DNA of 64,000 bases from Rhodosorus marinus CCMP1338 (Eukaryota; Plantae; Rhodophyta). Position 1 is the first letter of the stretch, and every line of letters starts with the position of its first letter. Made by a program: the position numbers and the translations under genes. Location: positions 124,001 through 188,000 of the forward strand of contig JAMWBK010000008.1 in assembly GCA_029953675.1 (NCBI GenBank), written 5' to 3'. Below the pieces are notes generated by a model, which searched no databases, was not told the DNA's origin, and was given only the letters and a program-made list of their open reading frames with translations. This document shows positions 9,618 to 61,344 of the stretch, in pieces.

Positions 9618-9639
9618 GGGTGGTCCAATCACCACTCAG

Positions 9640-10896: not shown

Positions 10897-11004
10897 GGGT
10901 TGCCCAATTGCTGGGTTGCCCAATTGCTGGGTTGCCCAATTGCTGGGTTGCCCAATTGCTGGGTTGCCCAATTGCGGGGTTGCCCAATTGCTGGGTTGCC
11001 CAAT
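10897..11004. repeat. Tandem repeat, ~6.75 x 16 bp (GGGTTGCCCAATTGCT)
   Basis: Direct reading; degenerate units extend left to ~10858. Confidence 0.95.
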
Positions 11005-11159: not shown

Positions 11160-11811
11160 TGGTCAGGTCGAGTCTTTTTTTAATGTTTTTAAGGGTATTC
11201 GTCTCCGCCCTGACATTGTGGTTCGTCATCACCGCACAGGTAAGCAGTACGTCATCGACGTCAAGGCGGCATCCCCATTACGAATCTCCTCGTTCGAACC
11301 GCATGTCAATCTGGTTATGTCTCGAGAGCTATTTCGTGGTACGACTCATCCATGCTGTTTACCGTTGATTCCAACTTCTCACTCTGGGCGCTTAGTCCAG
11401 ATAGTTATCGTTTATTCAAACTACTACCGAATGTAGCGCTAACGAATACGCTATTGGTCTCTCCCAATCCGCTGGCTGTGGACACCCTCAGTCAAGATTC
11501 CGCTGCTCAAAACCCCGTGTGTGACTTCTTGAGGTCTTTTAGTTCCTTTGTGCGCCCCTGCTGAAAACCCTGCGTGTGACTTCCTGAGGTCTTTTAGTTC
11601 CTTTGTGCGCCCCCCGCACAGGCGTTGTGCACCACCTGAGCCTCCCTCGGAGGCACCATCGCCATATGATACGGCTAAAAAGCAAGGGCAGGCAGCAACA
11701 GTGCGAGTGGATCACCTTGCTGAACGCCAATACGCCAGCTGAGGAGGAATCAATCTTGTGCGGTAGAAGCGGAGAGGTCTGCAGCAATGGTACCCGTAAT
11801 CATTGAGTGCA
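11160..11811 (+). mobile_element. Mosaic of CRE-like fragments (REL catalytic segment, ORF2 N-terminus-like piece, A-like ORF1 C-terminus, REL C-terminus)
   Basis: RLRPDIVVRHHRTGKQYVIDV at ~11200-11260; 11460-11660 matches A ORF1 18022-18165 and contains a 55-bp tandem duplication; MVPVIIEC at ~11790-11810. Confidence 0.7.
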
Positions 11812-12482
11812 TTAGGTTGGGGTTACGTTAGTCTGGGGTAGAATTTGGCCACCCTGAAGCCGAGAACCGAACCCGCCCCAGGAGCAGAAGAAGCCGATCC
11901 CCCAGCTTGGAAACATGGTTCCATTCAAAAAACCCTCTCCAGAGAGGCACACCATGCAGCTTTCCAAAGACTGGTTTCCCACGCGCAAATTTCAGCTGAA
12001 GATCGGGCCAGAATTCGGTCCGCAGCCGGAGCTGGCTCAGGAGTGTGGTTACGGGAAATGCCGACGCTTGCGCCGAAAAAACTGAGTACCGCCGAACTGC
12101 AAGTGAATGTACGACAGCTGTTGGGCTTGCCGATACCGGGAATACGGACGTCGGGGAATTGTACTAGTTGTGGTAGTTCGTATGGTACTAACGGCGTACA
12201 AAGGTTTCACCACTGCCCAACATCGACGGGACTATGGCAGCGAAGGCACGACGAAATCTGTACGGAGTCTGGGGTTACTTAATTAGACATAGTGTTGCGC
12301 TGCAGTAGGCAGCTGCCCAGTAAAGCTTACGGTTACGTTAGTCTGGGTCTGGGTATGTTTAGAGCGTACATAGTGTTTTAGTAGTGCGGTACTTTAGGTA
12401 GCAGCCGAATAAAAGGCTACGGGGTTGGGGTTGCGTTAGTCTGGGGTTACGTTAGTCTGGGGATTGTTTGGATTAGTCTGGG
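11812..12482 (+). mobile_element. Head-to-tail stack of family D fragments and 3' UTRs separated by tail blocks
   Basis: Tail blocks at 11812-11838, 12261-12278, 12331-12352 and 12419-12482; zinc-finger region CTSC...HHC...RRHD in 11845-12260; 3' UTRs match 38090-38145 and 38505-38585. Confidence 0.85.
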
Positions 12483-12526
12483 CCTGGAAAGCACAGCTTG
12501 TTCGTGGTGAGAAGCAGGAGGAAAGC

Positions 12527-13930
12527 ATGTCCAACGTTGGTGAGCCCCCTCCCGCGGGGGGGGAAACCCCGAGCAGTGAGAGTGCCCAGCGGGGTGACAA
12601 TTTCTGTATCGTTGATCAGCTTGAGGAGGGAGAACTCGACGAAAGCCAAGTGCAGCATATACCTGAGGCTGCACACTGTGATTCTCCAACGGAAACAATG
12701 GACACTGCGTCCACGGTTCAAGAAGAGGAATTTCTACAGGACTTCATGGATAAGGTCTCGAAGTACACCGCCCTCTACGAAGATGTTGGGGGTGGAAGTC
12801 GCAGATATGCAGCGATTTTTTGTCAATTTCGATCGTTTATACACCAGGTCAGGTACAATCGCCGATCTGAAGGAGATCAACGATCATCTGGAGCGGTTGG
12901 GTGCAAACCCCATGCTGTGGAACCCTTCAGAAGTGCGCAACGCAGGGCACCAGCGTCGTGGACAGAACACGAAGATACCCTATCAATTTGGGAGTCAATC
13001 CAGAGATCAGTCAACGGAGCTGTTTGGGATGGGACACCGTGAGCAACAAGACACCCTGGGACAACCGCAATTAGTACAGCAGACTATGGGACAGTCGAGG
13101 GTGGGACAACAAACTCCGGGACAGCCCGGGGTGGGACAGCAGGATCTCGCATTCCCCGCCCTGGGACATACCGCTCCCAGTGGCACCTACGCACAGCGTG
13201 CGGCCAAGGCAGCCGGCATGCGTCAACAGACAGCCCTCCGACAACTGCACGCCACGGTTGGAGGAAGTAAATGGGGCCCCGATACACACCCGGTGCTCGC
13301 GACGTTGCGCAACGTACGCCCGCCGCGCAACGAATTGGTGGCGCTCTCGGATTACAAACAAGTCCTGTGCACAGCTTTGGGTATTCCGGTACACCTGATT
13401 GCACATATCGATTTTGTTGCCACCCACGCACTGCTGGTATGTCATTCTGACGCGATACCGTTGATCACCAGCGCCATTGCGAGGGGAGTGTTCCGCTCAG
13501 GTGTGTTTGGATCCTTCGCGAGACGCCGCCAAGATCACCAGGTAACAATACACACCGGAGTCGAGCCAGAAGCGCGCAACCTGATTGGGTACAATGAGAG
13601 GCTCACCCATCAGCCACATGAAGTTAGCTAACGCACACTCGAACGAGCCATTGAACAGATGGAGAGAGTTAAGCGCCTAATTTCCCTGCTGTATATGCCG
13701 TTTACTACCTCGGCTTCCATACATGCGCACCTGGAAGCTCGCATGGAGTATCTACGCTCGCGCCTCGAGTCGCAGGAACCCGCCGCCCAGCGCCTGGCCT
13801 CTACTGTCACGGAAGGAGAGAGTGAGATCCCCCTGCAGACAGGAGCCGATAACGAAGATGTACTGATCCCTATAGTTACACCGGGCGATGCACAAAACGA
13901 ATTACGGCCAGATATTGGACCCTCTGAAAC
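12527..13930 (+). pseudogene. Family D (D2) ORF1, disrupted
   Basis: ATG 12527; frameshift in G run ~12787; in-frame TAA 13629-13631; core ATLRNVRPP...LCTALG homologous to 29270-29340. Confidence 0.8.
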
Positions 13931-13931
13931 T

Positions 13932-14297
13932 TCGCGTCGTCGACGAAGACGCTCCACCGCCTGATCCAGTCTTGACGATCCGAGAAGAACGGAGGCTCGT
14001 CGCGGCGTCGTTTGATTCCCCTACGTCTGCTCGGCATTATTGCGCTGGGTTTTCCTGGCTCTCCTGCGTGTCCATCGCGTGATGGTTGCCGTCAAGGGTA
14101 ACCTGTGTCGCAGTGGTATCAGGTGGAGTCTCCACGGCTGCCGGAGTCATCTCAGTATCCGGTCCGGTTCCATCGGCGGATACTCGCGAGCGCTTCTGTT
14201 GAGGTGGCTCCGGAAGGTTGCAGAGAAGCTCCGCATGGGGATTTTCCTCGTGTGCTGCGTTCGCCTGGGGTTACCCCAGACTAACGTAACCCCTAAC
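13932..14297 (-). mobile_element. Inverted fragment of family D ORF1/ORF2 region, preceded by a D tail block
   Basis: Reverse complement of ~29895-30222 (with an internal gap); tail CCCCAGACTAACGTAACCCCTAAC at 14274-14297. Confidence 0.85.
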
Positions 14298-14812
14298 TGC
14301 GCTGGCCACGGGGCAGGTAATCGCAAAGTCCACATATGTTGAGCGTCTGGCAGCAGCGTCGGAGGCGAGGAGTTCGGCTATACAACGGGGCGGTGCAGAG
14401 TCCGAGATTGATCTGGGCAGTTCCGACTCAACCTCAACCGTATGCCCTATCCGAGTCAAAAATTCGCTGAGGATGTACTTGAGGCGAGTGTGACGCCTCG
14501 TACGCAGACCTCTCAACAGTCCGCAGGAACCCAGGAAGTGGTAGCCACAAGCGTCAATCCGACTCTCACATCCCTGACAGAAAGACGGCCGATTAGGGTG
14601 CCACGGAGCCTGTGGCAAACCGAGATAGATCCGTGCGGCAGAACGGAACTGGAAAGCATCGAGACGATGACTCAATGACGACGGTAGCGTGGTTAACCAC
14701 AAGTGCGAGAGGTGGCCTCCCATGCCACGGAGACGAGCGGCAGTGGTAGGCGGCGTGAGAGGAGAATTGAGCATGACTGTGTGAGCGGCACTGTGTTGGC
14801 CCCAGGTGAGGC
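14298..14812 (-). mobile_element. Family B1 internal fragment (CCHC + REL)
   Basis: Near-identical to 27461-27970. Confidence 0.9.
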
Positions 14813-14969
14813 AACCCTAGATTAACGTTAGTCCAGTCGAAATTCCTCCAACTACCGAATGTAGCTTTAGCGATACTCAAGGAGAGCAGGAGGGGCGAGG
14901 CTAAGGAGACCCCAGAGCGGGGTAAGAAGACTAGTTTGTATAGGGAACAGCTAGCATAAGTCAGCAGGA

Positions 14970-21350: not shown

Positions 21351-21409
21351 TCTTTTTTTCCCCTCGGGGTTTTTTCTTTCAGCCTCCGATTAAACCATTC
21401 GTCGTAGAC

Positions 21410-23138: not shown

Positions 23139-23147
23139 AGTTAAGCG

Positions 23148-23503
23148 GGAAAACTTTTGAGACCCCGCTACATGTATTTAAGGATTTAATTCACGATGTG
23201 TACATCGGTCTTCACTTCCTGAGACAACACGGACTAACTCTAGACTGTAGTGCTAACGCGCCTCAGCTGGTGATAAAGGCGAAGGATCCAGGTATACGTG
23301 GGATCCCAACAACGGAATCAAAGGTAAAGAAGGGAAAGGGCATCGTGAAGGAGACGGTGCGGTTAACGGTCATGGACACCGAAGATGACATCGGGGAAAG
23401 TAACACCGACGAAGGGTATGCAGGGTTCGGTGATAATAAGGGAAGCGGAAAGGATCGGAGCAGCAAGGAAAAAGGGCTTGGCGAGATCATCCGAAGCCAG
23501 TAA
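23148..23503 (+). pseudogene. Retropepsin-like (LTR-retrotransposon-type) protease C-terminal fragment
   Basis: Removing the B insertion joins ATVELSGKTFETPLHVFKDLIHDVYIGLHFLRQHGLTLDC, resembling the (I/L)LGxDFL segment of retroviral-type proteases; the catalytic DTG/DSG is absent. Confidence 0.6.
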
Positions 23504-23791
23504 CTAGGTAATTAGTTGTTGTTGTTGTTTTTGTTGTGAGGCTATGCTAGTTGTCGAGGATTGGGGTTTTGTTTCTTTTTCGGTCGCGAGCGTGTTCGTT
23601 TACGGGAAGCGCTTCCTGTGGTACGCCTTCCCCTCGATTTTCCGCGGGGCGTCGTTTGCATTTGCAACTACTTCTGTCTTCCGGGTGGGTGAGTTGCGGG
23701 GCCTTTCCTATTTGGGTTGGGTTTGGTCGATTATTCTCTCGGTGCGGTTTCATATTGGTGGTGCAACGTTTCCTTTGCGGATTCCCTCAGG

Positions 23792-28295: not shown

Positions 28296-28390
28296 TTCAT
28301 CTTCACGCCTTGCGTAGCGCTTCATGCTATGCTAGTAAAGTCCAGTAACTAGGTACATTACCCCGGCATCATTATTTGGTCCCCGAATGA

Positions 28391-31300
28391 GGTTACGTTA
28401 GTCTGGGGTGGGGTGAGTCTGGGGTAAAAGGTAAAGTTCGTACGGAAGATAACAACAAAAGTTCGTAAGAAAGTTCGAAGATGATCGTGAGGGAGGTATG
28501 CGGGCCGTACCCCGAACCTCTTGTCATTCAGGGCCCGGACCCCTCGGGCACCCGGGAAGTTTTGCAAAGGCACCAGCACCAGTCTGATGGCAACGTGCAG
28601 GAGACACCGACGGAACAACAAGCAGGCGATGTTCAAGCAAGAACGCGGACCGAGTCTGCAGCCGCAACCGACCCGGCAGCCACATTCTTGCATCAACTGC
28701 GTAGCTTCGACAGATGCTACCAGGACCTGGGCATCGCTACGTCCGAAATTACAGACTTCTACAAAGCCGTTTTTCAACTGAACTCGAGGGTCAACAGCTC
28801 GCAAGAGCTGCAAGGTGTCACCGGACGCCTTACGGAGTTGTCCCGGAAACCGGGTATGTGGGAAGGTGGAGCCGCTACTACGAATTCTGCACCATCTCCG
28901 CATGATCTCCCGCGAGATCTCCCGCGACAGGCCGTAGGCAACCACCTCGGCCCCGAAACCCGTTACCGTAACGGTTGTCTGCCAGGAAGCAATGCCGTCC
29001 GTGATTTAGGAACCTGGCTCCCTGCGCCCCAGGGAGGGACAGGTGTCCGGGATCTAGGACACTATGCGGAGACATTCCCAGCCATCGGGGAGGGCCCTAC
29101 AAGGCCAACCTTCGCCGATTTCGCAGCACAAAAAGAACCAGCGAGAGGAGGAGATGCTCGTTCCAGAACTTCTGGACGCCCTGGACCCCAGACCCAACAG
29201 GCTGCCCTACGGCAACTGCACGCTACGGTCGGGGGGTCTGGCTGGGGACCCGATGTTGCTCCAGTCCTCGCGACGCTACGGAATGTCCGACCCCCAAGGC
29301 TGGATGAGGTGGCCCCTGCGGACTTTGCAACGGTTCTTTGCAGAGCACTGGGTATGCCCAGCTCTTATGTGGTGCATGTGGACTTTATTGCCTCCCATGC
29401 CTGCCTGCTGTGCCATCCAGACGCAATTCCGATTCTCCAAAGTGCCATCTCCCGAGGAGTTTTCCGGACTGGGATATTCGGATCCTTCACACAACGACAC
29501 GCCGATAGACAAGTAAGCCTTTACACTGGCCAGGCGCTGGACCCAGACAACCTTCTGGGTTACCTCGAACGTCAGACTATCGCTCCCGGGGATATCGCTG
29601 CCCACACGCTGAAGCGGGCCATCGAGCAGCTTATCCGCATTCGTTCGAGGATCCGCAGGCGACAAATCTCCTTCCACACTCTCGCAGCGCTCTACGAGTA
29701 TCTTGAGGGACGACTAGAGCTCCTAAAAGGCAGACAACATCCGCCTGAGGTACCCCGGGGAGTGCGCGGAACCCCCTGGGCCTGCAGCTGCTTCGAACGC
29801 AGACCCTGAAGCCTCGTCCCTTCCAGGGGATGTACAGGCAGACCGCGGGACAGTTGACGCCCAGGTTGAGACTAGCGCGACTTCCCAAGTACCTGAGAAC
29901 GCAGCACACGAGGACAATCCCCATGCGGAGCTCCTCTGCAACCTTCCGGAGCCACCTCAACAGAAGCGCTCGCGATTATCCGCCGATGGAACCGGACCGG
30001 ATACTGAGATGACTCCGGCAGCCGTGGAGACTCCACCGGATACCACTGTGACACAGGTTGCCCTTGACGGCAACCATCACGCGATGGACACGCAGGAGAG
30101 CCAGGAAAACCCAGCGCAATAATGCCGAGCAGACGTAGGGGAATCAAACGACGCCGCGACGAGCCTCTGTTCTTCTCGGATCGTCAAGACTGGATCAGGC
30201 GGTGGAGTGTCTTCGTCGACGACGTCACGGAAGGAGGCAGGCAGTGGACGCGCCTTACACAATGCCCGGTTCCCACACGGCGATTTGTGCCACGCGCCCA
30301 GGTTCAAACATGGAGCTGCCTCTTCCGTGCTGCATTAGAGCTCTCTATGGACAGCACCGCACCAACAAACGCCAGCCTGCTTCTTGTCGGACTTCCAGGC
30401 CTGGTCCTTGGACACTCTGCACTTGATGTTGGCATTCAGGTATCGCATGTGCTTGAAGGAGAATTCTCTACGGTCTGGAGCGCTCTAGAGGACAAGGCGT
30501 CTATGCTGTCGCATACTACCGCACCGCAAGGAGCTGAAGCGGTTCGACGCTAACATCTCGAGCGCCACAAGCGAGCGCTGAAACTAGCACACCTTGGCCG
30601 CCTTTCAGATGCAGCTCGGAGCCTACAGGCCACCGAAATGGCACCTTTTACCGCGGCTACGTGGAGACAACTACAAGCGCTCTTTCCCAACCCGGCGGAA
30701 GGTGACCTACCAGACGAGATTGCACACGCCCTGCAATCTTTGCTCGCTCTGAAGACCGAAACACTAAAGCGGCGGTGGGATTCAAGAAAAGCGGCCGACG
30801 AGGGCCTCATGTCGATCGTGGCACGTCTTCCTCAGGGCAAGAGCCCAGGTCCTAGCGGTCTCCGAGTGGAACACCTCCAAGGTGCAACTCAACAGACGCA
30901 AGTGGCGTTGATTCGTGTATTGCGACAACTGGCGACCGCTCCTGAGAAATTTTCCCCGGCTCTGACCCGCGCCCTTCGCAGTAGTCGACTCCTGCCGTTC
31001 GCGAAGCCCAACAAGGGTTCAGTGCCGCAGGAACATCCCGGAGTTCGCCCTATCGGAGTACCAGAAGTTTTGCGCAAGGTAGCAACGCAATGGACTCTTC
31101 ACGCGGTTATGGACAGGGTGCGTGAGCTCCTGGTGCCCTTACAACTGGGTATTGGAGTAAGTGGCGGGTGCGAACGCTCACTTCACGCGATCCAGGCCCA
31201 TTTGTCATGCGAACCCGATTCGGTGGTCCTTCGGGTAGACCTAGAGAATGCCTTTAATCGCATCGACCGACGCCTTGCCAAGCAACTGGTGGACGAACAC

Positions 31301-32196
31301 TTGCCGGAGCTTGCACCAGTGTACAGACTTGGCTATGGAAGCGACAACGCGGACTCACCGACGCTCTGTGGCTGGCGACCTTCACCTGGACAGAACGAAA
31401 CCGACACCTCTCGCCTGACTCTCCAAGCAACTACAGAGTCCAACAGGGAGATCCACTGGGGCCGGTGTTACATGCACTATCCCTGGCGCCCTTTCTAAGA
31501 GCGTTGCGAGCCAAGTTCCCCAACGAAACGATTGTTGCTATCCACGACGATATCACGATTTTCGGGTCGCTACAAGCCGTGAAGGCGTCCCTGGCATGGG
31601 CAAAAACTGTGCTCCCCTCTCTTGGAGCACGCCTGCAACTCGGCAAGTGCACTGTGTACGGGCGAACACTGACTACCACGCGAGTGGTCAACCATGAGAT
31701 TCCTGGAGTGCAAGTGACCAGAGACGGAGTCACCATCCACTCGATACCGATAGGCAGCCGAGAATATATCGAACAGGAGTGCCGGGGGCTGCAAAATAAG
31801 CTAGTAAAGTCCAAATAAGCATGAGAAACTCTTTGAGGAAATTGCCAAGCTCCCACAACCGGAGCTTACGACGCAAATTGCCCTCTTCAGGTTCTGTGCA
31901 GAAACGCGACTAGACTATGTGCTACGATGCCTCGCATACGAGTTTGGAAGAAATCTGGCATGCGAGGCCGACGTGATGACCAGATATCACCTGGAAATTC
32001 TATTCGGAGGCCTCGCTACGACAGCTGTAGAGGACGATGAGTACGCAGAGCTGATCTCGGACCAAATCGCTCTGCCCTGCCGCTGGGGAGGTTTGGGTTT
32101 CGCTACTCGAAAGCGCGTCCAACCCATCGCGTTTTACTCGTCATGGAGAAACACCTTCCGGAACAATGCAGATGAATGGCCATACCTGACTGAACT
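28391..32196 (+). mobile_element. Family D1 element, 5' part (ORF1 and RT), interrupted by a B1 insertion
   Basis: Tail block 28391-28424; ORF1 to TAA 30120-30122 (frameshift ~29730-29800); ORF2 from ATG 30122 with nonsense at 30551, frameshift ~31434 before QQGDPL, IHDD, LPCRWGGLG. Confidence 0.88.
31802..31812 (+). mobile_element. Family B tail-only micro-insertion (TAGTAAAGTCC) with 8-bp TSD
   Basis: AAATAAGC at 31794-31801 and 31813-31820; the homologous D3 site (~60880) lacks it. Confidence 0.85.
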
Positions 32197-35100
32197 GGAC
32201 TGGACTTTACTAGCATAGCCTGAAGCGCTACGCAAGGCGTGAAGATGAACTAATAACTAGGGAGGGAAGCCTGCAACCCCAGGCGCCGATGGCGCGCCTC
32301 GGAAAGCATGTCGCTGGAATATCGCCAAAGGGAGACACTTAAACGCCTCAAGAGCGCCAAATATTCAGTAGGATGCTCAGCAAAACATTTCCGCAACCAT
32401 TCTAAACCCGACTTATCCACGTGACCAAAGCTTTCCACAAGGAATGGCTGGAACCGGTGAGAGCGACCCTCAGCGCAAGGCAGACTGGCCATGCTCTCAG
32501 CATACCGTCGTTCCTTAACTCTTCGAAGGGCTGAAGCCGCGGCCCCCCGGCGGCGGGCGGCTGCGGTGAGGTGGGCGCTGGCCACGGGGCAGGTAATCGC
32601 AAGGTCCACATATGTTGAGCGTCTGGCAGCAGCGTCGGAGACGAGGAGATCGGCTATACAACGGGGCGGTGCAGAGTCCGAGATGGATCTGGGCAGTTCC
32701 GACTCAACCTCAACCGTATTCCCTATCCGAGTCAAAGATTCGCTGAGGATGTACTTGAGGCGAGTGTGACGCCTCGTACGGAGACCTCGCAACAGTCCGC
32801 AGGAACCCAGGAAGTGGTAGCCACAAGCGTCAATCCGGCTCTCACATCCCTGACAGAAAGACGGCCGATTAGAGTGCCACGGAGCCTGTGGCAAACCGAG
32901 ATAGATCCGTGCGGCAGAACGGAACTGGAAAGCATCGAGACGATGACTCAATGACGACGGTAGAGTGGTTAACCACAAGTGCGAGAGGTGGCCTCCCATG
33001 CCGCGGAGACGAGCGGCAGTGGTAGGCGGCGTGAGAGGAGAATTGAGCATGACTGTGTGAGCGGCACTGTGTTGGCCCCAGGTGAGGCTATGTTGAATCA
33101 CATCAGCGCGGGAGCTCCACAATCGGCTCAAACCCGGGTAGTCTGCAACAGGTGACCCGGGGCTAGCCTCTCCGTCATCGGCAAGAACTCGGTCGAGGGG
33201 ACACCTCAATCGCTTCAGCTCGTCCCCATAACAGCTCCCTCCAGGAACGAAAGCGGGACCGATTTGCGTCCGGCACGGCGTTGCACCTCCTGAACGCGTG
33301 TTGAAGACCATCATAAATTGTCAAAAGCGGGGGCGGCAGGCTCACTGGATCCTCGTTGGTCAAAGCTCGAGCCAAGAGGCAGGCACTTCGCATCCGGAAG
33401 GTCACCAACGTTCGCAGCGCGGTAGGCCAGGAGGCAACCGCCGCTGGCGAGCATACCAGCCCACGGTCTGCGACGCCGAATCCCCCTAATCGCAACGGTA
33501 GAGCGATCTGTGCACGAATAAAGTCCCTGTCGGGAGCAGCTTCAAGATCGAGGGGCTCATCCAAGAGCGTTCCCCAGTGTTGCAGGGTCATTTCGTCGGC
33601 TTTAGCCGCGATCCACGAGCCCCAAGCTGGAGGCAGGCTGCGCAACCAGTAGTTGAGTCTGGGACCGGCACAAAAGCGGGAAAGCAAGCAGGCCGATTGC
33701 AGCATGCTGTCGGGTAGGTGCTCAATGGCGTCGGTGAGTTGCTTGTGCCGTGCCAAAACTCGCTCGCAGGATGCTTGGACAAAGTTGTCAGTCCCCAATC
33801 CGACGCCGTGGTGTTCGAACCCTTCACGTTCGCTGATTAGTCGCAGAGTGGGTGGCAGAGAGTTCAGCGACACGTCCCTCGGGGGAGAAAGCGACATTTT
33901 TCTGTTTCCACAGTCAAACCGACGCGACGTGCAATCGCTTCGATCGCGGTCAGTCCCCTAGCCAGGGTGTCAGGGGTGCCCAGCAATGTTACGTCATCGT
34001 GGTACGCGCAGATTCGAAGATCCGAGACCTCAGTCGAAAGACGTAAAAGTACGAGCTGTAGGGCACAGGCATGAAGAAGAGGTCCGCAAGGGTCGCCTTG
34101 TTGGACGCCAGTATGTGCTTGAAAAACAGTGCCCTCCGTTGTCAAGTAGGGGAGGCTCTCCCCTCCGTAAATACCCGATAGAAACGGCCACGCCTCCGGA
34201 AACACACGTCGGAGCACCTCTAGCGCATGCGTCCGCGACACGCTGTTGAATGCGTTCCGGAAATCAACCACCAAGACTCCCCACTCCGGCCTACTGGCGC
34301 GTTCTAGCTCGATCCCATGGGTGATCAGTTCGCAACCCCAGAAAATCCCACCCCTACTTGCAAGGGCGCCATAAACGCTGTGACGCGCTGGCGAAGGCGC
34401 TGGCATAGCCACCTCCCGGCTAACTTCCGTAGGCTCTCCACCATCCCGATCGGCCGGAGACGCGGGTGGGCCGGCTGGTGGTCAGGTTTCGTGAGCAAGC
34501 AAAGCTGTGCCTGCCGGAGATGTTCCCATGGCGCAGACGCACCCGATACGCCCTGGAACAACTTGTTAAGGATCCTCAGAAGCGCGCTCTGGCCAGGCTG
34601 GCTCAGGGCCTGCAATAGCTCTGTTCTTAGTCCGGAGGGTCCGGGACAGCGTCCCCGACGCGAGGTACGAAGCAAATCCTCCAGGTCAGACTCACTGAGG
34701 GTCAGATCGATGCGAAACCTGGCCAACTCCGGACGGTCCAAGAATACCTCGAATTCAGGGGACAAATCCACGTCGGACTCAGGGAACAAAGACGACACCA
34801 TCTGGGCGAGACTATCATCGTAGGGGAGGACAGGCGCCTGGCCCTCCAAAACCCGCGCCGCTCGACTTAAATCGCCCACTGCTACCAATTTCTGTACTCG
34901 AGCTGGCACGGGCGACACTGTGCCATGCCGAGTCCGACGGGCGGATGGTGCTGACGACGCCAAATAGCTGCGCTGTAGTACTTCGAAGTCTCCCTTCAAG
35001 AACAGGGCCAGTCGGTCTCGTACTCGCCATCTGCGCTCCGATGTGTGAATGGGGGCCAGAATCAGGCGCGGCAAGACCCCCAGAAAAACCCAAATGACTG

Positions 35101-36968
35101 TGTCCCGAATGTTGCGAGCCAGGCTCGTGAAGATGAAATCGAGAATGGTTCCAGCTACTAGAAGGTCTCCACGAGGAAGGACGACTGGGGGAATGCCCCC
35201 ACGGAGGGGAAGCGAGCCTCCTTCCAAGGAAATCCACCGCCGGAGCCAACTCCGAAAACGCGTACGCCAAATGCCCCAGTCTCCGCCCTCCTTCAGGACA
35301 TAAGACTGTAGATCCATAGGCTGCGACCTCGCAGCCGTGCCTGGAGCGCTAATCGTGCTTCTCCCCCTTAGACCCGGGGGAGTCGGTCCTCGCTCTCTTA
35401 CCTCCTATCCGCACCAAAGTCGTGAGCCTCCCACTCCGCGAGGCTCGCGGAACGGATCCCGCGGGCTTCAGCAAAGTAACCTGGGCGTCCTCCACCGCCA
35501 TGCCCTCAGTCTGCTCCCCTGCCTCACCACTCTCGCTGGAAGTAGTGCTGGAAGCAGAGCCCTCCAAAATCCCCACCCGCTGCAGCTCTGTCTTGTAGCG
35601 CGAAGTCAGCACAAGTCGCCTCTCCAGATCGAAGAAACTGGAAACCGCCATGCGCAGGGCCCGACCGGAACCGCGCCAACAAGATCCTCTCAAGGCGCTG
35701 AATCCGTAGCCAATGGATCGCTGCCGCCTTCACGCTGCTCTCATGCTCAGAGAGCCCTGCCGTTTCTCCCGGAGACAGGAAATTGCCCGAGAAACGGTCA
35801 AAATCGAAGTGCAAAACCACCTGCGGGTTGCAGCGCAGCCACCGGGCGCTCTCAGGCCACTGCTCGGTAGGCTTCGCCAGCAAGGCCTCCAGGTACTTGG
35901 CGGCGGTTGCGGAGACCAAAAACAGCACATCGCGGCCCTCATAGTTTGCGAAGAAGAAATCACCCCGGCTGCACCCTAACGATTCCGCAAAAGTGTCCCG
36001 GAAGTCTCGCATAGACGGAACCTGTCCTCGTGTAGTCTGGGGCCGGACATTTCGCACCCACAGAAATTGGAGAGTGGTCTCCACAGGTCCATCCTGAGGC
36101 TCGCGAGATGGTATGAAACGGAGCATAGCCGCCGTACGTGTGGCAGTGGTGCCCTTCCGCAAGACTGATGCGTACGAAGCGCCCCCTTGCGGCCACCACG
36201 TGCCCCCGAAGTAGCCGGGAGCTGGTGACCACCTGAGGGCTGGTCCAAGAGAGGGAAGTCCACAGCTGCAGTCTCCTCCACACCGGTTGCCGCACAGTCA
36301 CCACCACCATTGCCTCGAGTCCCCGAGCGCTGAAGCGCGTTTTGGCCCGGCCTGCCGCTCCCCAACGTCGTACTGTCCCGCGCAGAAGCAACAGCCCTCG
36401 CCTGTCCCGGGACAGGTTCATGTTGATTGACCGGATGTTGACTGCCTTCAGCCAACGCTGCCACTCTGGGGCAATTCAAATTCTCGTCCGAATTTGAATT
36501 TGACCTGGCCAGCAATCCCGATTCCAGCCCACCTAGCTTCTGGGTGAGCTGAGGGAGCACTCCACGATCACTCGCAGCCGTGATCAGGCTGGTGACAGCG
36601 GAGATAAGTGAACGCGCCTGGGTGCCAGAAGCGCCTTCCAAGTCAACCTCGGAAGAAAACGTGCCGCAGCTGAGGCGAACACGGAGTCCCCCACCTGGCA
36701 GTGCCTCCTTGGGAGGAGGCTCCGTCGAGCGCGGAGATATCCCTACCATCCTGAGGGAATCCGCAAAGGAAACGTTGCACCACCAATATGAAACCGCACC
36801 GAGAGAATAATCGACCAAACCCAACCCAAATAGGAAAGGCCCCGCAACACACCCACCCGGAAGACAGAAGTAGTTGCAAATGCAAACGACGCCCCGCGGA
36901 AAATCGAGGGGAAGGCGTACCACAGGAAGCGCTTCCCGTAAACGAACACGCTCGCGACCGAAAAAGAA
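32197..36968 (-). mobile_element. Near full-length family B1 element, copy 2, with 8-bp TSD; several small indels
   Basis: ACTGAACT at 32189-32196 and 36969-36976; reverse complement of copy 1. Confidence 0.92.
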
Positions 36969-38158
36969 ACTGAACTAGAGCGGGAGGTTACGGCAGAACG
37001 CTCACCAGACACATACGAGCCGATGGATCAACGATGGTCCACTGCACAGCTGGCGGACCAGATCTGTGCATCGTCGCGAGCAATACAACGGAGGCTCGGA
37101 CCAGAAACCCCGCCGCGGATCTTGGCACTGACAACCCTGCAACAACCGCGAGAAACATCTCTTCGAAGCGCCCCGGGCGAGACTGCAGCTTGGAATAATG
37201 GTTCAATACAACAAACCCTCTCTCGAGAGCCACACCATTGTGCATTCCAAAAGCTGGTATCCAACCCACGAATCTCCCCTGAAAACCGAGCTCGAATACG
37301 GTCTGCCGCGGGATCCGGGTCGGGAGTCTGGCTACGTGAAATACCAACGCTGACACCGAAAAAATTGAGTGCGGTTGAGATGCAGGTATACGTTCGACAA
37401 CTGCTGGGTCTGCCAATTCCGGGATTGCGGACCACCGAGAAGTGCACTAGTTGCCGGAGTAAACACGGAAGGACTGGGGTACAACGGATTCATCACTGCC
37501 CAACATCAACTGGACTGTGGCAACGTCGGCATGACGAAATCTGCAGAGAGCTGACACGGTGGCTAAGGCGATGGAACTTCATGGACGTAGAGCAAGAACC
37601 TGAGGGGTACTTCGAGAACTACGGGCTGCGACCTGATATCGTTGCTAGGCATCCGAGGACCAAACAAAGGTATGCGCTGGATGTGACGGTGGTGTCACCA
37701 TTACGGGGAAAATATTTGCGGCGGAGCCAAGATGATAGCGGATACGCGGCGAGAGCTGCGGAGAAGTGGAAAATCGCTCACTACAAGGAAGCGATGGTGA
37801 TCGAGAAACCGGATGACAAGTTCATCCCGATAGCGATAGAGACGTTTGGGCGTACGGGGCAAATAGCACAAGAGTTCCTCCGCGACAGCTGCAAACACCT
37901 ACTGCACAGGAGTGAGGAGCTAAGAGACGTGAGATCCCAGATAAACCGGCAACTATGGCGAGGTAACGCAGAGATAGCATTAGGCGCTTTGCGCGTGGAC
38001 CAGCTGGAGAACCCGCTGGTGCCTGTTTTTTCTTTTGAACGTAGCATGAGACCCCGGTAGCGGGGTTCCAGTAAGTTTTTCCCTAGATAGGATTAGACGT
38101 AGTGTTGCGCTGCAGTAGGCAGCTGCCCAGTAAAGCTTACGGTAACGAAGGTTTGGGG
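36969..38158 (+). mobile_element. Family D1 element, 3' part (linker, CCHC, REL, 3' UTR, tail)
   Basis: Excising B1 restores EWPYLTELEREV in frame; CTSC...HHC...RRHD, LRPDIVARHP...YALDV, KFIPIAIETFG; stop 38058-38060. Confidence 0.9.
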
Positions 38159-38161
38159 TAA

Positions 38162-38585
38162 TTGAGGCAAACGAGCTAGATAAACGGATACGCGGCGGAG
38201 AAAGGGGAGCAACGCAAAGTGGCACACTACCAGGAGGTAATATGCGCTGAACCCAGAGAGGTGATACTCGTACCATTTTTTCTTGAGACGTACGGACGAA
38301 TGGGAAAGGCAGGCTAGGGTTTTCTGAGAAAGGCAACTGCTCATCTCCATGATCGTGAAACACACCTATCATCGGTAAGAGGGCAGTTGAAAAGTATTTT
38401 ACGGCAGCAAAATGCGCAGTTAGTAGAAGATGCGATCGAGAAGGACCGGGCGGACCGGGCGATGTTTCCGTTTGCTAGTTTTAGATGAGACCCCTGGCCA
38501 GGGTGTCTGGGTATGTTTAGAGCGTACATGGTGTTTCAGTAGTGCGCCACGGTAGGTAGCTGCCGATTAAAGGCCACGGGGTTAC
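38162..38585 (+). mobile_element. D-like subfamily 3' fragment directly behind the D1 tail
   Basis: GYAAEKGEQRKVAHY...ETYGRMG, LRQQNAQL; 3' UTR matches 12347-12424. Confidence 0.8.
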
Positions 38586-58497: not shown

Positions 58498-58519
58498 GTG
58501 TCCGTGACTACTAGGACAG

Positions 58520-59433
58520 TCCCGTAGCCAGACCCCGCACCCCGTTCCAGATGCCGATCGGATCCTCGCCCGGTCTAGGTCGTCCAGTGTTGAATCCCCG
58601 GTAAGCTCCTCAAAGGCTTGTCGGTGACACTCTCGAGAGAGCGTTTTTTGGATCGGACCGTCAAACCTTGGGGTACCTGCTGTGTCTTCCGCTGTGCCTT
58701 CGGCCGAGTCCTCCAGCGGTTGCTAATCGGCCAGCCTCTGGATGCGTGCACTGGTCGTCGCTGGCAAACGTCGTCTAATTGCGCGACTTGCCTCCAGCAG
58801 TTGCCAAGCAAGTGCATCGGTTGTCCATCGAAGTCGCATCCGTGGCATCGATTCTCCTGGTGCAGCCGCAATACACTCCTGGGAAAGCCGTTCGAGGTAG
58901 CTTGATTCAGTGGTGTTCTCTTGCCGGCTGTGTTTCCACCCTGCATGGAAGGCAACTGGTTGAATTCTCGTGCGCGTGGCAAAGCCAAGTCCTCCTCATC
59001 GACACGGGAGTCGAATCTGTTTATCAACCGTTGCAGCCTCGCGTGCGGTGATATCCTGGTGTTGACATAGGCCTCCACATAAGCCTTCCAGCCTCGCGTG
59101 CGGTGATATCCTGGTGTTGACATAGGCCTCCACATAAGCCTTCCAGCTCCGAGAGGGTGATCCCGTCCGCCTCGCGTGCAACGGTACGTCCAAGGGGGTA
59201 CGCCAGGCCACGTGTATGATAATCGAGCCTTGTGCCTGCGCAGTACCGAAAGAGAGCCAGCTTGACTTGGAGTTCAGCATCTGGGAGTCGCTGAATCGAT
59301 TTTACCAGGTTCGCATGTCGCGTTTGAATAGCTCGACATTGTTCTTCCGCAAACACCAGAGTGCCAATTGGTGTGGAGTACAACGTAGTCCCGGCGCGAG
59401 TCACTCGAATCTCAGGGATATCTAGGTTAATCA
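58520..59433 (-). mobile_element. D-related RT C-terminus/linker fragment with a 55-bp tandem duplication (59034-59143)
   Basis: LFRYCAGTRLDY, RLPCR*GGLGFA, RARIRSASG. Confidence 0.8.
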
Positions 59434-59745
59434 CGTAACCCCAGACTAACGTAACCGTAAGCTTTACTGGGCAACTGCCTACTGCAGCGCAACACTACGT
59501 CTAATCCTATCTAGGGAAGAACTTACTGGAACCCCGCTACCGGGGTCTCATGCTACGTTCAAAAGAAAAAACAGGCACCAGCGGGTTGTCCAGCTGGTCC
59601 ACGCGCAAAGCGCCTAATGCTATCTCTGCGTTACCTCGCCATAGTTGCCGGTTTATCTGGGATCTCACGTCTCTCAGCTCCTCACTCCTGTGCAGTAGGT
59701 GTTTGCACCCCAGACTAACGTAAGCGTAAACTTTACTGGGCATAC
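59434..59745 (-). mobile_element. Two stacked family D 3' ends with tails
   Basis: 59434-59707 is near-identical to 37890-38145; tail blocks at 59434-59456 and 59708-59723. Confidence 0.88.
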
Positions 59746-59749
59746 CCCT

Positions 59750-61290
59750 AACCTACGCCCCATATACTTCCCTTGCAGAGGTGACACGACCGTCACGTCC
59801 AGGGCATACAGCTGAAATGTCCTCGGATGCGTAGAAATGATATCCGGTCTTAGTCGGTAGTTCTCGAAGTACCCCTCCGGTTCTTGCTTAATGTCGATGA
59901 AATTCCAGCGATTCAGCCATCGCGCCAGCTCCTACAGATTTCGTCATGCCTTCGCTGCCATAGGCCCGTCGATGTTGGGCAGTGGTGAAACCTTTGTACG
60001 CCGTTAGTACCATGTATACTACCACAGCGAGTACACTTTTCCGTAGTCCGCAGCCCCGGAATCGCTAGCCCCAGTAGTTGTTGGATATTCACCTGCATTT
60101 CGGTCGAGCTCAACTTCTTCAGCTCCAACGTCGGCAGTTCGCGCAACCAGACTCCGGATCCGGAGCCCGCGGCGGACCTGATTCGAGCATGATGTTCGCC
60201 GGAGATGCGCGGATTGTTAACCAGGGGTTGGAATGCGCAATGGTTTGCCTCCCGAGAGAGAGTTTGTTGTGTAGAACCAATATTCCAATCGCCACAGTCT
60301 TCTGGGGCGTCTTCTGGGGGGTTTTCCCTCGTCTGCTGCAGGTTGGCAAGTCTTCTGATCCGGGGCGCAGTTTCGGGGCGCAGCCTACGTTGTATCGCTA
60401 GAGCAGATGATCGGATCTGGTCTGCGAGTTGTTCTGTCGACCATTGTAGTCGCGTCGCGGTGTTCGTAGCCGGAATTTTGTCTGTATAAACCTGCCTCTC
60501 CAGCTCAGCGATGTAAGGTCAGTCTCCCGGATTGCTTCGAAAGGTATTTTTCCAGGCCGAGTAGTAAGCTATAGGCTGGATACGCCGTCGAGTAGCAAAC
60601 CCCAATCCTCCCCACCGGCAAGGCAGCGCAATCTGTTCCCAGATGTGTCCCAGGCACTCCTCGTCGTCCATGGCAGAGGTAGTAAGGCCTCCCAGTAAGG
60701 TTTCCAGGTGATATCTGGTCATGGTATTCGCCTCCCGTGCCAGACTGCGGCCGAACGGGTAGGCTAGGCATCGTAGAAGATAATCTAGGCGCGTTTCAGC
60801 GCAGTACCCGAACAATGCTACCTGTGCGTTAAGTTCATGTTGCGGTGGCTGTGCTATTTCCTTGATGAGCCTTTCGTGCTTATTTTGAAGCGCACGGCAC
60901 TCGTGCTCGATATATTGCCGGTTTCCTAGCGGAATCGAATGGATAGTGACGCCGACTCGGCTAACATGTACGCCAGGTATCTCGCGATTGATGGCTCGCG
61001 CCGTCGTCAAGGTTCGGCCGTATAGAGTGCATTTGTTGAGTTGCAGGCGGGCCCCAAGAGCAGGGAGCATAGTTCGGTTCCAGGCTAGTGCTTGCTTCAG
61101 TTCCTGCAGGGGTCCCACGATGGTATTATCGTCATGCATAGCGACTATCGTTAGATCGGAGAACTTTGTTCGCAGAGCCTTTAGGAACGGTGCGAGGGCT
61201 AGTGCATGTAGCACCGGCCCAAGCGGGTCACCCTGTTGTACTCCCGTAGCTGCTGGAGCGTCAGTCGTGAGTACTCCGTTTGGTTCTCTC
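59750..61290 (-). mobile_element. Family D3 ORF2 fragment (RT through REL)
   Basis: GVQQGDPL, MHDD, LPCRWGGLG, nonsense at 60519, CTRC...HHC...RRHD, LRPDII...YALDV. Confidence 0.88.
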
Positions 61291-61344
61291 CAGGTGCCTA
61301 GTCGTTGGACCGTGGTCGATGTGCAGCTTGACCAGACCATTTCC

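What the first reader, a model, noticed from the sequence alone, without database searches (positions are those of the whole stretch)
11812..12482. Telomere-like 16-mer tail TTACGTTAGTCTGGGG seeds head-to-tail arrays of family D
Seen: tail blocks at 11812, 12261, 12331, 12419, 14274(-), 28391, 38141, 59434(-) and 59708(-), with TTAGGGG/TTGGGG variants. Nearly all are followed directly by another truncated D-type sequence in the same orientation. Several follow internal sequence rather than a 3' UTR (11812, 12261, 14297). TGGGGTAA at 28420-28427 and 38154-38161 may be a TSD of D1 inside a tail. Known: the CRE-clade elements MoTeR and Cnl1 form telomere-associated arrays. Inference: D preferentially inserts into this repeat, which may be the host's unusual telomere repeat or a self-made target.
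Basis: partly seen in the sequence, partly recalled or inferred. Interest (0 to 1): 0.75.

Follow-up and report, generated by a model that had tools for sequence, protein, structure and literature searches.

The report
Telomere-like 16-mer targeted by retrotransposons
In the red alga Rhodosorus marinus, a family of R2-like jumping genes always ends at the same telomere-like 16-base repeat and stacks head to tail on it; that repeat may be this alga's still-unpublished chromosome-end sequence, but I could not test that.

Summary
TTACGTTAGTCTGGGG occurs 9 times in the window against 0.41 expected, at the stated places. It recurs in a second locus of the same genome and in an independent transcript contig.

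The window is Rhodosorus marinus CCMP1338, contig JAMWBK010000008.1, 124-188 kb from the contig's left end.

Family D is a non-LTR retrotransposon with a reverse transcriptase and a C-terminal R2-type restriction-like endonuclease. All 10 D-type 3' ends read ...TAAAG(C/G)YYAC + G2-4 + TTAC. Seven continue through at least one whole unit. The 5' junctions are ragged (GGGG+T/TTA/TTAC/TTACGT). This fits site-specific target-primed insertion at GGGG^TTAC, and it explains the head-to-tail arrays.

Seven junctions do not fit insertion alone. There the repeat follows 3'-truncated internal sequence or unique host DNA, mostly at 2-6 nt microhomologies and in variable phase. Two repeat tracts are irregular, two blocks lie head to head, and blocks are dense 4.5-10 kb from a contig end. 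All of this resembles telomere healing and MoTeR-type relics.

Whether the 16-mer caps the chromosomes could not be tested, because the contig ends were out of reach. I put the host-telomere reading at about 0.5 and an element-made tail at about 0.3.

The parts
11818..11839 (+). Repeat block TGGGG TTACGTTAGTCTGGGG T. It follows 3'-truncated internal sequence of an E-like element, joined at a GGTT microhomology.
11840..12265 (+). D fragment from the ORF2 C-terminal region. It is 5'-truncated and also 3'-truncated inside the RHDEIC motif. It shows 68% aa identity to D1.
12266..12278 (+). Partial unit AGTCTGGGGTTAC joined to internal D sequence. The intact copy reads GAGAG-CTG here, so the join is at a microhomology.
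12279..12330 (+). The last ~52 nt of a D1-type 3' UTR; an extremely 5'-truncated copy.
12331..12348 (+). Repeat block GG TTACGTTAGTCTGGG T, followed by TCTGGGT.
12349..12420 (+). The last ~70 nt of a D2-type 3' UTR, ending AATAAAAGGCTAC.
12421..12462 (+). Longest repeat tract in the window: GGGGTT GGGG TTGCGTTAGTCTGGGG TTACGTTAGTCTGGGG (TRF 2.3 copies).
12463..13934 (+). D3, a D element with an apparently complete 5' end. It carries ORF1-like ORF 12498-13631 and is cut at 13934 by an inversion junction.
13935..14262 (-). D1 fragment, truncated at both ends; 97.6% identical to 29897-30224.
14263..14298 (-). 36-nt filler AGTTAGGGG TTACGTTAGTCTGGGG TAACCCCAGGC between X-internal and D1-internal sequence. 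It contains the palindrome CTGGGGT-A-ACCCCAG, a head-to-head arrangement.
14299..14812 (-). X-family fragment, truncated at both ends and flanked by 16-mer-type blocks on both sides.
14815..14830 (-). Degenerate unit TAACGTTAATCTAGGG, about 140 nt downstream of the end of a host ORF (stop at 14970).
23144..23510 (+). Left part of element G, a D-like 3' portion. It is split by an X insertion with the 14-bp duplication CCAGTAACTAGGTA.
28356..28392 (+). Right part of element G, ending ...CCCCGAATGAGG. This 3' end is unlike D1 or D2 but is followed by the same 16-mer.
28393..28427 (+). Irregular repeat tract TTACGTTAGTCTGGGG TGGGG TGAGTCTGGGG TAA.
28428..38140 (+). D1, about 4.9 kb without the nested X element at 32197-36976. 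It has ORF1 at 28481-29809, a frameshifted reverse transcriptase, and the C-terminal endonuclease ORF at 37023-38060.
38141..38161 (+). Degenerate unit GG TAACGAAGGTTTGGGG TAA. It contains the second TGGGGTAA.
38162..38577 (+). D2-type element, 5'-truncated: end of ORF2 plus the 3' UTR.
38578..38585 (+). Minimal tail GGGGTTAC, followed by sequence with no other copy in the window.
59724..61297 (-). D copy, 5'-truncated at about D1 position 2955, ending GCCCAGTAAAGTTTACGC.
59707..59723 (-). Repeat block TTACGTTAGTCTGGGG T.
59457..59706 (-). The last ~250 nt of a D1-type element; 96.7% identical to D1.
59433..59456 (-). Repeat block GG TTACGTTAGTCTGGGG TTACGT.
58509..59432 (-). D-related reverse-transcriptase segment (40-53% aa identity to D1), 5'-truncated. 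A copy in L001 starts about 290 nt earlier, directly behind another repeat block.

Best explanation
Shown:
- Family D of Rhodosorus marinus is a non-LTR retrotransposon with a reverse transcriptase and a C-terminal R2-type restriction-like endonuclease.
- Its copies are joined to the repeat TTACGTTAGTCTGGGG in one fixed phase at the 3' end (...TAC + G2-4 + TTAC...).
- At the 5' end the phase varies (GGGG followed by T, TTA, TTAC or TTACGT).

Inferred mechanism:
- The endonuclease nicks the C-rich strand inside or next to the G run of GGGG^TTAC.
- The 3' end of the RNA (...UUACGG, with a conserved small hairpin and an AAUAAA/AGUAAA about 8 nt upstream) pairs with the nicked strand and is reverse transcribed.
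- The second strand is cut 3-8 nt downstream.
- Each insertion therefore leaves repeat sequence on both sides. The next copy lands there, and head-to-tail arrays of full-length and 5'-truncated copies build up.

Inferred and not shown: the 16-mer is the alga's own telomerase-made chromosome-end repeat, so D is a telomere-repeat-specific element in the SART1-like orientation (G strand after the 3' end).
- On this reading the arrays in the window are internalised relics of former chromosome ends.
- Ends eroded into the distal 3' side of the last element and were healed by telomerase at short microhomologies.
- They then received new D copies, and were later moved inward by fusion, inversion or segmental duplication.
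For: Motif excess: 9 against 0.41 expected in the window, 6 against 0.07 in L001, and 2 against 0.03 in L002, a contig from an independent JGI sample.

Host and position: the window is contig JAMWBK010000008.1, record 124-188 kb. L001 starts 4.5 kb from the right end of contig JAMWBK010000011.1.

Endonuclease: the motifs CxxC..HxC, RRHD, RPDIV, (L/I)DV and K..HY are shared by families D, X and E. The predicted fold of the D C-terminal ORF has R2 proteins as its seven best PDB matches, with E from 4e-6 to 2e-3.

Junctions:
- All 10 D-type 3' ends are followed by G2-4TTAC, and 7 run through at least one whole unit.
- Several 3' UTR subtypes whose ends average only 63% column identity (D1-type, D2-type, the copy ending at 59724) carry the same 16-mer. 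Element G, whose 3' end is unlike either, carries it too.
- The 5' junction phases are ragged.

For the telomere reading:
- Seven junctions place the repeat after sequence that is not a D 3' end. These are window 11822, 12265, 14299(-) and 14831(-), and L001 1734(-), 2438(-) and 5843(-). Four of the five TE-internal ones lie at 2-6 nt microhomologies, and they enter the repeat in different phases. Target-primed insertion does not produce 3' truncation.
- Two of the seven follow unique DNA just after a host gene or ORF.
- Two tracts are irregular, with every unit ending in GGGG (L001 1670-1733; window 28393-27).
- Two blocks lie head to head, as a fusion would leave them (window 14265-93; L001 5804-38).
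- The 6 kb of L001 nearest the contig end hold 4 blocks. A gene-dense interior control of 24 kb holds none, and no TE.
- Five of the seven junctions point the G strand at the nearest contig end.
- MoTeR arrays show the same set of features: short interstitial tracts, truncation plus de novo telomere, and internal relics.
- Rhodophyte telomeres are reported as unusual and unresolved.
Against: - No array longer than 2.3 regular units (about 4-5 irregular units in L001) was seen in 112 kb of this genome.
- The window is 136-184 kb from the contig end. Its arrays lie in both orientations, and sequence with no other copy in the window follows the (+) array at 38586, so they are not terminal now.
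- Two of the seven healing-type junctions point away from the nearest end.
- The genome paper marks telomeres on 12 contigs without remarking on an unusual motif.
- The 11-nt GTCTGGGGTTA at 21454, flanked by the direct repeat GTATTTT, looks like a tail-only insertion. That would mean the tail is carried by the RNA.
- Tracts between elements are nearly always about one unit. That fits a tail remade at each event better than random cuts in a long array.
- 3'-truncated junctions at microhomologies could also arise from end joining after endonuclease-made breaks.
- No telomerase RNA template was looked for or found. Two metagenome scans, one genome-collection scan and one viral scan found no tandem copies elsewhere.
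Confidence: 0.5

Rival explanations
1. The 16-mer is D's own 3' terminal repeat. It is carried on the RNA or made by reverse-transcriptase slippage, like the 3' repeats of CR1 or L2-type elements. It also happens to be the site that D's endonuclease prefers. Every D copy then plants a new landing pad, and arrays grow without any link to telomeres. Junctions to internal sequence arise from tail-only insertions and from microhomology-mediated repair of endonuclease-made breaks.
For: - Inter-element tracts are almost always about one unit.
- The AAUAAA/AGUAAA signal lies 8 nt before the tail, so cleavage 10-30 nt downstream would put one unit on the RNA.
- The micro-insertion GTCTGGGGTTA has a 7-bp direct repeat at 21447-21471.
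- D arrays in the window have non-repeated or host sequence beyond them.
- The neighbouring X family clearly makes its own tail, (CCAGT)n or (AATAAAGCC)n, which matches its target duplications.
- A transcript contig spans 3' UTR, one unit and the next D copy.
Against: - Several diverged 3' UTR subtypes, plus element G with an unrelated 3' end, share an identical tail. This would need strong selection on the tail in every lineage.
- Three of 10 D ends have only G2-4TTAC and no unit.
- The repeat follows unique host DNA twice and 3'-truncated elements five times, in variable phase.
- An X fragment, whose family has a different tail, is flanked by the 16-mer on both sides.
- Irregular tracts and head-to-head blocks are not expected from templated copying.
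Confidence: 0.3
2. The 16-mer is a host repeat that is not the telomere: a dispersed or subtelomeric minisatellite, or a fragment of a multicopy host gene. D targets it in the way R2 targets 28S rDNA or CRE/SLACS target spliced-leader genes.
For: - Elements with a restriction-like endonuclease typically target conserved multicopy host sequences (established knowledge of R2, R4, CRE, SLACS and NeSL).
- An 18-nt identical stretch lies inside the ABC transporter ORF at 2330-2347. Thirteen of those nt are kept in the paralogue.
Against: - No flanking host-gene sequence beyond the 16 nt is ever carried along.
- The unit itself is tandemly repeated.
- Rfam and tRNA scans of the window found nothing.
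- No free-standing array without transposable elements was seen in 112 kb.
Confidence: 0.1
3. The chromosome ends carry a shorter repeat such as TTAGGGG or TTGGGG. [quoted passage not shown]
For: - TTAGGGG and GGGGTTGGGGTT lie directly next to 16-mer units at 14290(-) and 12421-12432.
- MoTeR carries variant repeats.
Against: A scan for any (T1-4 A0-2 G3-8)n array with n of 2 or more found only two-unit chance-sized matches in the window, L001, L002 and L004. The short variants can all be derived from the 16-mer by internal slippage.
Confidence: 0.07

Closest known systems
MoTeR1/2 (Magnaporthe oryzae), FoTeR (Fusarium oxysporum) and Cnl1 (Cryptococcus): telomere-targeted CRE-clade non-LTR retrotransposons
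   Same: - Reverse transcriptase plus a C-terminal restriction-like endonuclease.
- Head-to-tail arrays of full-length and truncated copies, separated by very short repeat tracts.
- Truncated copies capped by repeat added at a 1-few nt seed.
- Relics at internal chromosome sites.
- Inversions and duplications around them.
   Different: - After the 3' end, D has the G-rich strand, whereas MoTeR and FoTeR have the C-rich strand (TAACCC)n with their 5' end facing the chromosome end.
- The repeat is 16 nt rather than 6.
- The host is a red alga.
- It is not shown that the repeat is the host telomere.
- No variant-repeat tract was seen at the D 5' end.
SART1 / TRAS1 of Bombyx mori (telomeric-repeat-specific non-LTR elements)
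   Same: - Site-specific nick at a fixed position of the telomeric repeat.
- A precise 3' junction helped by pairing of the RNA 3' end with the target.
   Different: SART and TRAS use an AP-type endonuclease at the N-terminus and end in poly(A). D uses a C-terminal restriction-like endonuclease and has no poly(A) in integrated copies.
R2 (28S rDNA-specific element)
   Same: R2 proteins are the best structural match to the D C-terminal region. Both use target-primed reverse transcription, recognise a structured 3' UTR, and give a precise 3' and a ragged 5' junction.
   Different: The target is a short tandem repeat rather than rDNA. D has a separate ORF1. Sequence identity is only 13-16%.
GilM / GilT of Giardia lamblia
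   Same: Non-LTR elements with a restriction-like endonuclease, in head-to-tail tandem arrays at chromosome ends and capped by telomere repeats (my own knowledge of Arkhipova and Morrison 2001; not checked here).
   Different: Those arrays are terminal and have poly(A)-type junctions. The D arrays seen here are interstitial and are joined by the 16-mer.
3' microsatellite-type tails of CR1, L2, Rex and I-type elements
   Same: A short tandem repeat at the 3' end that varies in copy number, as in the X family of this same window.
   Different: Those units are 3-8 nt and family-specific. The D unit is 16 nt, telomere-like, identical across diverged subfamilies, and also found away from D 3' ends.

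Membership tests
Non-LTR retrotransposons with a restriction-like endonuclease (R2/CRE/NeSL/R4/HERO group) | Reverse transcriptase domain | tested here: met
   RVT_1: E = 1.9e-6 for D copy 60519-61340(-), 3.1e-6 for the D-type transcript protein P0124, and 0.028 for the D1 fragment. All are just under Pfam's cut-off because the ORFs are fragmented. The X and E families score 1e-9 to 4e-16.
Non-LTR retrotransposons with a restriction-like endonuclease (R2/CRE/NeSL/R4/HERO group) | C-terminal CCHC motif followed by a PD-(D/E)xK-type nuclease (RHD/N ... K/RPD ... D ... K) | tested here: met
   Alignment A2 shows CxxC..HHC, RRHD, RPDIV, LDV and K..HY. In the AF2 model the core residues 160-300 have pLDDT 75-96. 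The top seven PDB fold hits are all R2 proteins, with probability 1.00.
Non-LTR retrotransposons with a restriction-like endonuclease (R2/CRE/NeSL/R4/HERO group) | Frequent 5' truncation, no LTRs, a precise 3' junction and a variable 5' junction | tested here: met
CRE clade (CRE1/2, SLACS, CZAR, MoTeR, Cnl1, FoTeR) | The reverse transcriptase and endonuclease group with CRE-clade references in a phylogeny | not tested
   No reference sequences were at hand. The only pointer is the genome paper's RepeatMasker table: 4036 copies, 9.04% of the genome, labelled LINE CRE/SLACS. I do not know which of those families is D.
Telomere-targeted retrotransposons | The target repeat is the host's telomerase-made terminal repeat | not testable with these tools
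   Contig ends could not be fetched. L001 stops 4.5 kb short of the end of contig 11. No paper states the motif.
Telomere-targeted retrotransposons | Copies concentrated at chromosome ends | tested here: inconclusive
   There are 4 blocks in the 6 kb of L001 nearest the contig end, 10 blocks in the window at 136-184 kb from an end, and none in a 24-kb interior control. Only three loci were sampled.
Telomere-targeted retrotransposons | Head-to-tail arrays separated by short tracts of the target repeat | tested here: met
   Window 11818-13934, 28356-38585 and 61297-58509(-); L001 1-2437(-); L002.
MoTeR/FoTeR type specifically | 3' end followed by the C-rich strand, 5' end facing the chromosome end | tested here: not met
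   D 3' ends are followed by the G-rich strand in every case, compared with the MoTeR and FoTeR descriptions.
Telomeric repeat (telomerase product) | Long terminal arrays, with the G strand running 5'->3' to the end | not testable with these tools
   The longest tract seen is 64 nt (L001 1670-1733). For polarity, 3 of 4 blocks in L001 point to the contig end, and the window is mixed.
Telomeric repeat (telomerase product) | Added de novo to broken ends at short seeds | tested here: inconclusive
   Seven junctions have the expected form. End joining after endonuclease breaks would look alike.
Telomeric repeat (telomerase product) | Complementary template in a telomerase RNA | not testable with these tools
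   The whole genome was not searchable. Rfam found no RNA in the window.

The most novel reading that the evidence does not exclude
The 16-mer is not made by telomerase. D's own reverse transcriptase lays it down, and D arrays together with their tails form or maintain the chromosome ends of Rhodosorus. That would be a retrotransposon-based, Drosophila-like end-maintenance system in a red alga, and it could explain why rhodophyte telomeres resisted TRAP and hybridisation assays.
Probability: 0.07. Interest if true: 0.9.

Novelty: new variant of a known kind. Interest (0 to 1): 0.55.

Why it matters
Rhodophyte telomeres are an acknowledged gap. The 2013 survey found them 'recalcitrant to standard analysis', and the Rhodosorus genome paper marks telomeres without giving a motif.

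If the 16-mer caps the chromosomes:
- It would be the first telomere motif for the Stylonematophyceae and one of the longest outside yeasts.
- D would be the first telomere-repeat-specific retrotransposon in Archaeplastida.
- D would also be the first restriction-like-endonuclease element known to enter telomeres in the G-strand orientation.
- Erosion truncates such elements at their 3' end. That leaves a footprint which incomplete reverse transcription cannot produce, so old chromosome ends could be read directly from the sequence.

If the tail is self-made instead, D is a clear case of an element that plants its own landing pad. That would explain how CRE-type elements came to fill 9% of this small genome.

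Either way the test is cheap, because the assembly and the long reads are public.

Tried and rejected
- **Literature.** I searched for the 16-mer, its rotations and 11-12-nt cores. There were no relevant hits.
- **Genome paper.** I searched the Rhodosorus genome paper and its nine held supplements for the telomere motif. It is not given.
- **Collection scans.** I scanned for a dimer (32 nt), a junction-spanning 21-mer and an 18-mer. Metagenomes gave 0 hits twice, bacterial and archaeal genomes gave 0, and viral contigs gave 0. This says nothing about the alga's own ends.
- **Exact look-up of the window's ABC transporter.** Not on record; the annotated model is 1349 aa. The 307-aa gene worked and placed the window.
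- **Homologues of the D endonuclease ORF.** Only four turned up, all Rhodosorus transcripts or a transcript-like contig. D ORFs are not annotated in the assembly, so they could not be used to walk to contig ends.
- **Third homologue search.** I used the 661-aa gene next to the L001 arrays, hoping to fetch DNA closer to the contig end. It returned nothing, probably because the PDE repeat swamped the word index, and the search was wasted.
- **Sequence search of the D endonuclease ORF against PDB.** Not significant; the fold search was needed.
- **Rfam and tRNA scans of the window.** Nothing found, so no sign that the 16-mer is a piece of a known RNA gene.
- **Rejected: chance.** Ruled out by the shuffles.
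- **Rejected: assembly artefact.** The same junctions occur on two contigs and in an independent transcript contig.
- **Rejected: 12463-12482 as a tail variant.** It is a D 5' end.
- **Rejected: the 16-bp tandem repeat at 10890-11004 (AATTGCTGGGTTGCCC) as a diverged tail array.** Only 8 of 16 positions match in the best register, by my own comparison.
Full report

Yes. TTACGTTAGTCTGGGG with up to 3 mismatches occurs 9 times in the window against 0.41 expected, and none of 100 shuffles reached 9. Eight of the hits have at most one mismatch. TRF finds 2.3 tandem copies at 12426-12462.

A scan for any 8-mer of the circular unit added four sites:
- a degenerate unit at 14815-14830 (-);
- a minimal GGGGTTAC at 38578-38585;
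- an 11-mer at 21454-21464;
- an 18-mer inside a host gene at 2330-2347 (-).

Two small corrections apply. TTAGGT at 11812-11817 belongs to the upstream element. The stretch 12463-12482 is the 5' start of a full-length D copy, not a tail variant.

**2. Where the window comes from**

The intronless ABC transporter at 2171-6235 is 85% identical to Rhodosorus marinus NDN08_007376. An exact look-up of the 307-aa gene at 7986-8909 places the window on GCA_029953675.1, contig JAMWBK010000008.1 (2,117,290 bp). Window position w corresponds to record position w + 124,000. The arrays therefore lie 136-184 kb from the contig's left end. They are distal but not terminal.

The paralogous ABC gene lies on contig JAMWBK010000011.1. 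Locus L001 starts 4.5 kb from that contig's right end. L001 carries the motif 6 times against 0.07 expected. A contig from an independent JGI sample (L002) carries a D 3' UTR, one unit, and then a 5'-truncated D. It comes from the sample that supplied one of the transcript-type homologues. A gene-dense interior control, L004 on contig 13 at 354-378 kb, has no such element and no motif.

**3. What the elements are**

The window holds several related families.

*Family X* is 4.8 kb, with four long copies. It has an intact 1023-aa ORF with RVT_1, and R2 proteins are its best sequence match in PDB. X makes its own tail, (CCAGT)n or (AATAAAGCC)n, and has target duplications of 14 and 8 bp.

*Family D* is about 4.9 kb. 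D1 spans 28428-38140 and is interrupted by an X element.
- It has an ORF1 with no known domain, and a reverse transcriptase that scores just under Pfam's cut-off because the ORFs are fragmented.
- Its C-terminal ORF carries the motifs CxxC..HHC, RRHD, RPDIV, LDV and K..HY, which it shares with X and E.
- The AlphaFold model of that ORF is confident over residues 160-300.
- The seven best PDB fold matches are all R2 retrotransposon proteins.

D is therefore an R2-type element bearing a restriction-like endonuclease. The genome paper's RepeatMasker table lists 9.04% of the genome as LINE CRE/SLACS. I did not run a phylogeny, so membership of the CRE clade stays untested.

**4. Junction anatomy**

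3' side:
- All ten D-type 3' ends found by their conserved terminal motif read ...TAAAG(C/G)YYAC, then two to four G, then TTAC.
- Seven continue through at least one whole unit, one of them degenerate.
- Three stop at G2-4TTAC. They are followed by sequence with no other copy in the window (38586), by an inverted repeat block (L001 5811), and by the 3' end of an inverted X (L001 22813).
- The last 60-100 nt of the 3' UTRs average only 63% column identity across D1-type, D2-type and the copy ending at 59724, yet the 16-mer behind them is identical. Element G, whose 3' end is unlike either, carries the same 16-mer.
- A small hairpin about 15 nt upstream is conserved, with one compensatory pair. 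This is weak evidence.

5' side:
- New copies start after GGGG plus T, TTA, TTAC or TTACGT.
- Several start at a complete D 5' end: 12463, 28428 and L001 1669(-).
- Others start at scattered internal positions.

A fixed 3' phase with a ragged 5' phase is the signature of site-specific target-primed reverse transcription. The simplest reading is a bottom-strand nick within or beside the G run of GGGG^TTAC and a top-strand cut 3-8 nt downstream. So is a 5-bp GGTAA duplication at the usual site.

**5. Junctions that insertion alone does not explain**

Seven repeat blocks follow something other than a D 3' end:
- window 11822, after E-like coding sequence, joined at GGTT;
- window 12265, after D coding sequence inside RHDEIC, joined at GAG/CTG;
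- window 14299(-), after X coding sequence;
- L001 1734(-), after the D endonuclease region, joined at AGGG/TAC;
- L001 2438(-), after the middle of a D 3' UTR, joined at TAGATCT;
- L001 5843(-), after unique DNA 78 nt past the stop codon of a host gene;
- window 14831(-), after unique DNA about 140 nt past a host ORF, with a degenerate unit.

These junctions enter the unit in different phases, set by the local microhomology. Target-primed insertion truncates 5' ends, not 3' ends.

If the G strand of the repeat runs toward a chromosome end, the 3' end of a D copy is its distal end. Terminal erosion followed by telomerase healing would then give exactly this footprint. Further D insertions would produce the serial pattern actually seen in both loci: truncated element, repeat, truncated element, repeat, full element.

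Three further observations fit that picture:
- Two tracts are irregular while every unit ends in GGGG. They are L001 1670-1733 (TTACGTTAGTCTGGGG TTACGTTAGTCTGGG CTGGGG TTTGTCTGGGG TTATCTGGGG TTA) and window 28393-28427.
- Two blocks are head to head (window 14265-14293; L001 5804-5838), as a fusion or fold-back would leave them.
- Five of the seven junctions point the G strand at the nearest contig end.

The MoTeR literature describes the same set of features around a true telomere repeat. It reports interstitial tracts of at most two units as the stable state, truncation plus de novo telomere at a one-base seed, and internalised relics.

**6. What speaks against the telomere reading**

- I saw no long array in 112 kb of this genome.
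- The window's arrays lie in both orientations, with non-repeated or host sequence beyond them.
- Tracts between elements are nearly always one unit. An AAUAAA/AGUAAA signal lies 8 nt before the tail, so the D RNA could itself end with one unit.
- The 11-mer GTCTGGGGTTA at 21454 is flanked by a 7-bp direct repeat. It looks like a tail-only insertion at an unrelated site.
- Microhomology junctions can also come from end joining after endonuclease breaks.
- The genome paper does not remark on an odd telomere motif.

The self-made-tail rival therefore stays alive. I put the host-telomere reading at about 0.5 and the element-made tail at about 0.3. A non-telomeric host repeat gets about 0.1, and a shorter true telomere with the 16-mer as an element-borne variant gets about 0.07. 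A scan for any short T/A/G-type array found nothing beyond chance-sized pairs.

**7. Comparison with known systems**

In architecture D is closest to MoTeR, FoTeR and Cnl1. These are CRE-clade elements with a restriction-like endonuclease that sit in telomeres as arrays. D differs in polarity: those elements are followed by the C-rich strand and face the chromosome end with their 5' end, while D is followed by the G-rich strand. From my own knowledge, that polarity matches SART1 of Bombyx, which uses a different endonuclease type. D also differs in having a 16-nt unit and a red-algal host.

The unit contains TTAGTCTGGGG. From memory, this resembles the Yarrowia repeat TTAGTCAGGG and the 11-nt hymenopteran repeats. 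That is a lead, not a test.

**8. Novelty and verdict**

Neither the motif nor its rotations appear in any searchable paper. Rhodophyte telomeres are on record as unresolved. The kind of system is known, so I rate this a new variant of a known kind.

The deciding check is to read the ends of the public assembly and its long reads. It is simple, but these tools could not do it.

Noticed in passing
window 2330-2347 (- strand), inside the ABC transporter ORF 2171-6235; L001 10168-10180: An 18-nt stretch identical to the repeat (GTCTGGGGTTACGTTAGT) lies in the coding sequence, where it encodes ..TNVTPD... The paralogue on contig 11 keeps 13 of these nt (GTCTGGGGTTACG). It spans the presumed D target GGGG^TTAC but is unoccupied. 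My rough chance estimate for the 18-mer is about 1e-4. The origin is unexplained.
   Followed up: partly
window 21447-21471: GTCTGGGGTTA (11 nt of the unit) is flanked on both sides by GTATTTT. It sits just past the 3' end of the E element and looks like a tail-only micro-insertion with a 7-bp target duplication. No empty site was available for comparison.
   Followed up: partly
window 23497-23510 / 28342-28355 and 32189-32196 / 36969-36976: Family X has its own 3' tail, (CCAGT)n or (AATAAAGCC)n, and clear target duplications: CCAGTAACTAGGTA (14 bp) and ACTGAACT (8 bp). Both overlap CAGT, which suggests the X tail pairs with its target. X copies are 98-99% identical to each other, so the family was active recently.
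   Followed up: partly
window 1-21402 compared with L001 9286-21027: There is a segmental relationship between this region and the subtelomere of contig 11. The ABC genes are 85% identical, while the adjacent E element (16671-21402) is 98.4% identical and inverted relative to the gene. The transposable elements therefore arrived, or were homogenised, after the gene duplication.
   Followed up: partly
window 10857-11004: A tandem array of a 16-bp unit, (AATTGCTGGGTTGCCC) x 7.2, preceded by (AATTGTCC) x 4. It has the same period as the D repeat and shares CTGGGTT, but only 8 of 16 positions match.
   Followed up: partly
window 14263-14298; L001 5804-5838: Palindromic head-to-head joins of G-strand and C-strand repeat (for example CTGGGGT-A-ACCCCAG). 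They are compatible with a fold-back, a telomere fusion or an opposite-strand insertion.
   Followed up: partly
window 12296-12316, 38106-38126, 59471-59491 (-) and homologous positions in L001 and L002: A conserved 7-bp hairpin (GCGCUGC AGUAG GCAGCUGC) lies about 15 nt before the D 3' end. One pair changes G-C to A-U in three copies. It may be a binding site for the reverse transcriptase.
   Followed up: partly
window 11503-11613 and 59034-59147; 39289-39573; 42545-42805; 9468-9618: Other tandem duplications: 55-bp x 2 inside transposable-element fragments, 142-bp x 2 and 145-bp x 1.8 in host-like DNA, and 37-bp x 4.1.
   Followed up: no
window 7986-8909 (-), 14970-16295 (-), 39420-40094 (-); L001 5920-7905 (-): Several genes for secreted-looking, lysine- or cysteine-rich proteins with signal peptides and no Pfam domain lie between the transposable-element arrays. 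This may be a lineage-specific gene neighbourhood of the subtelomeric type.
   Followed up: no
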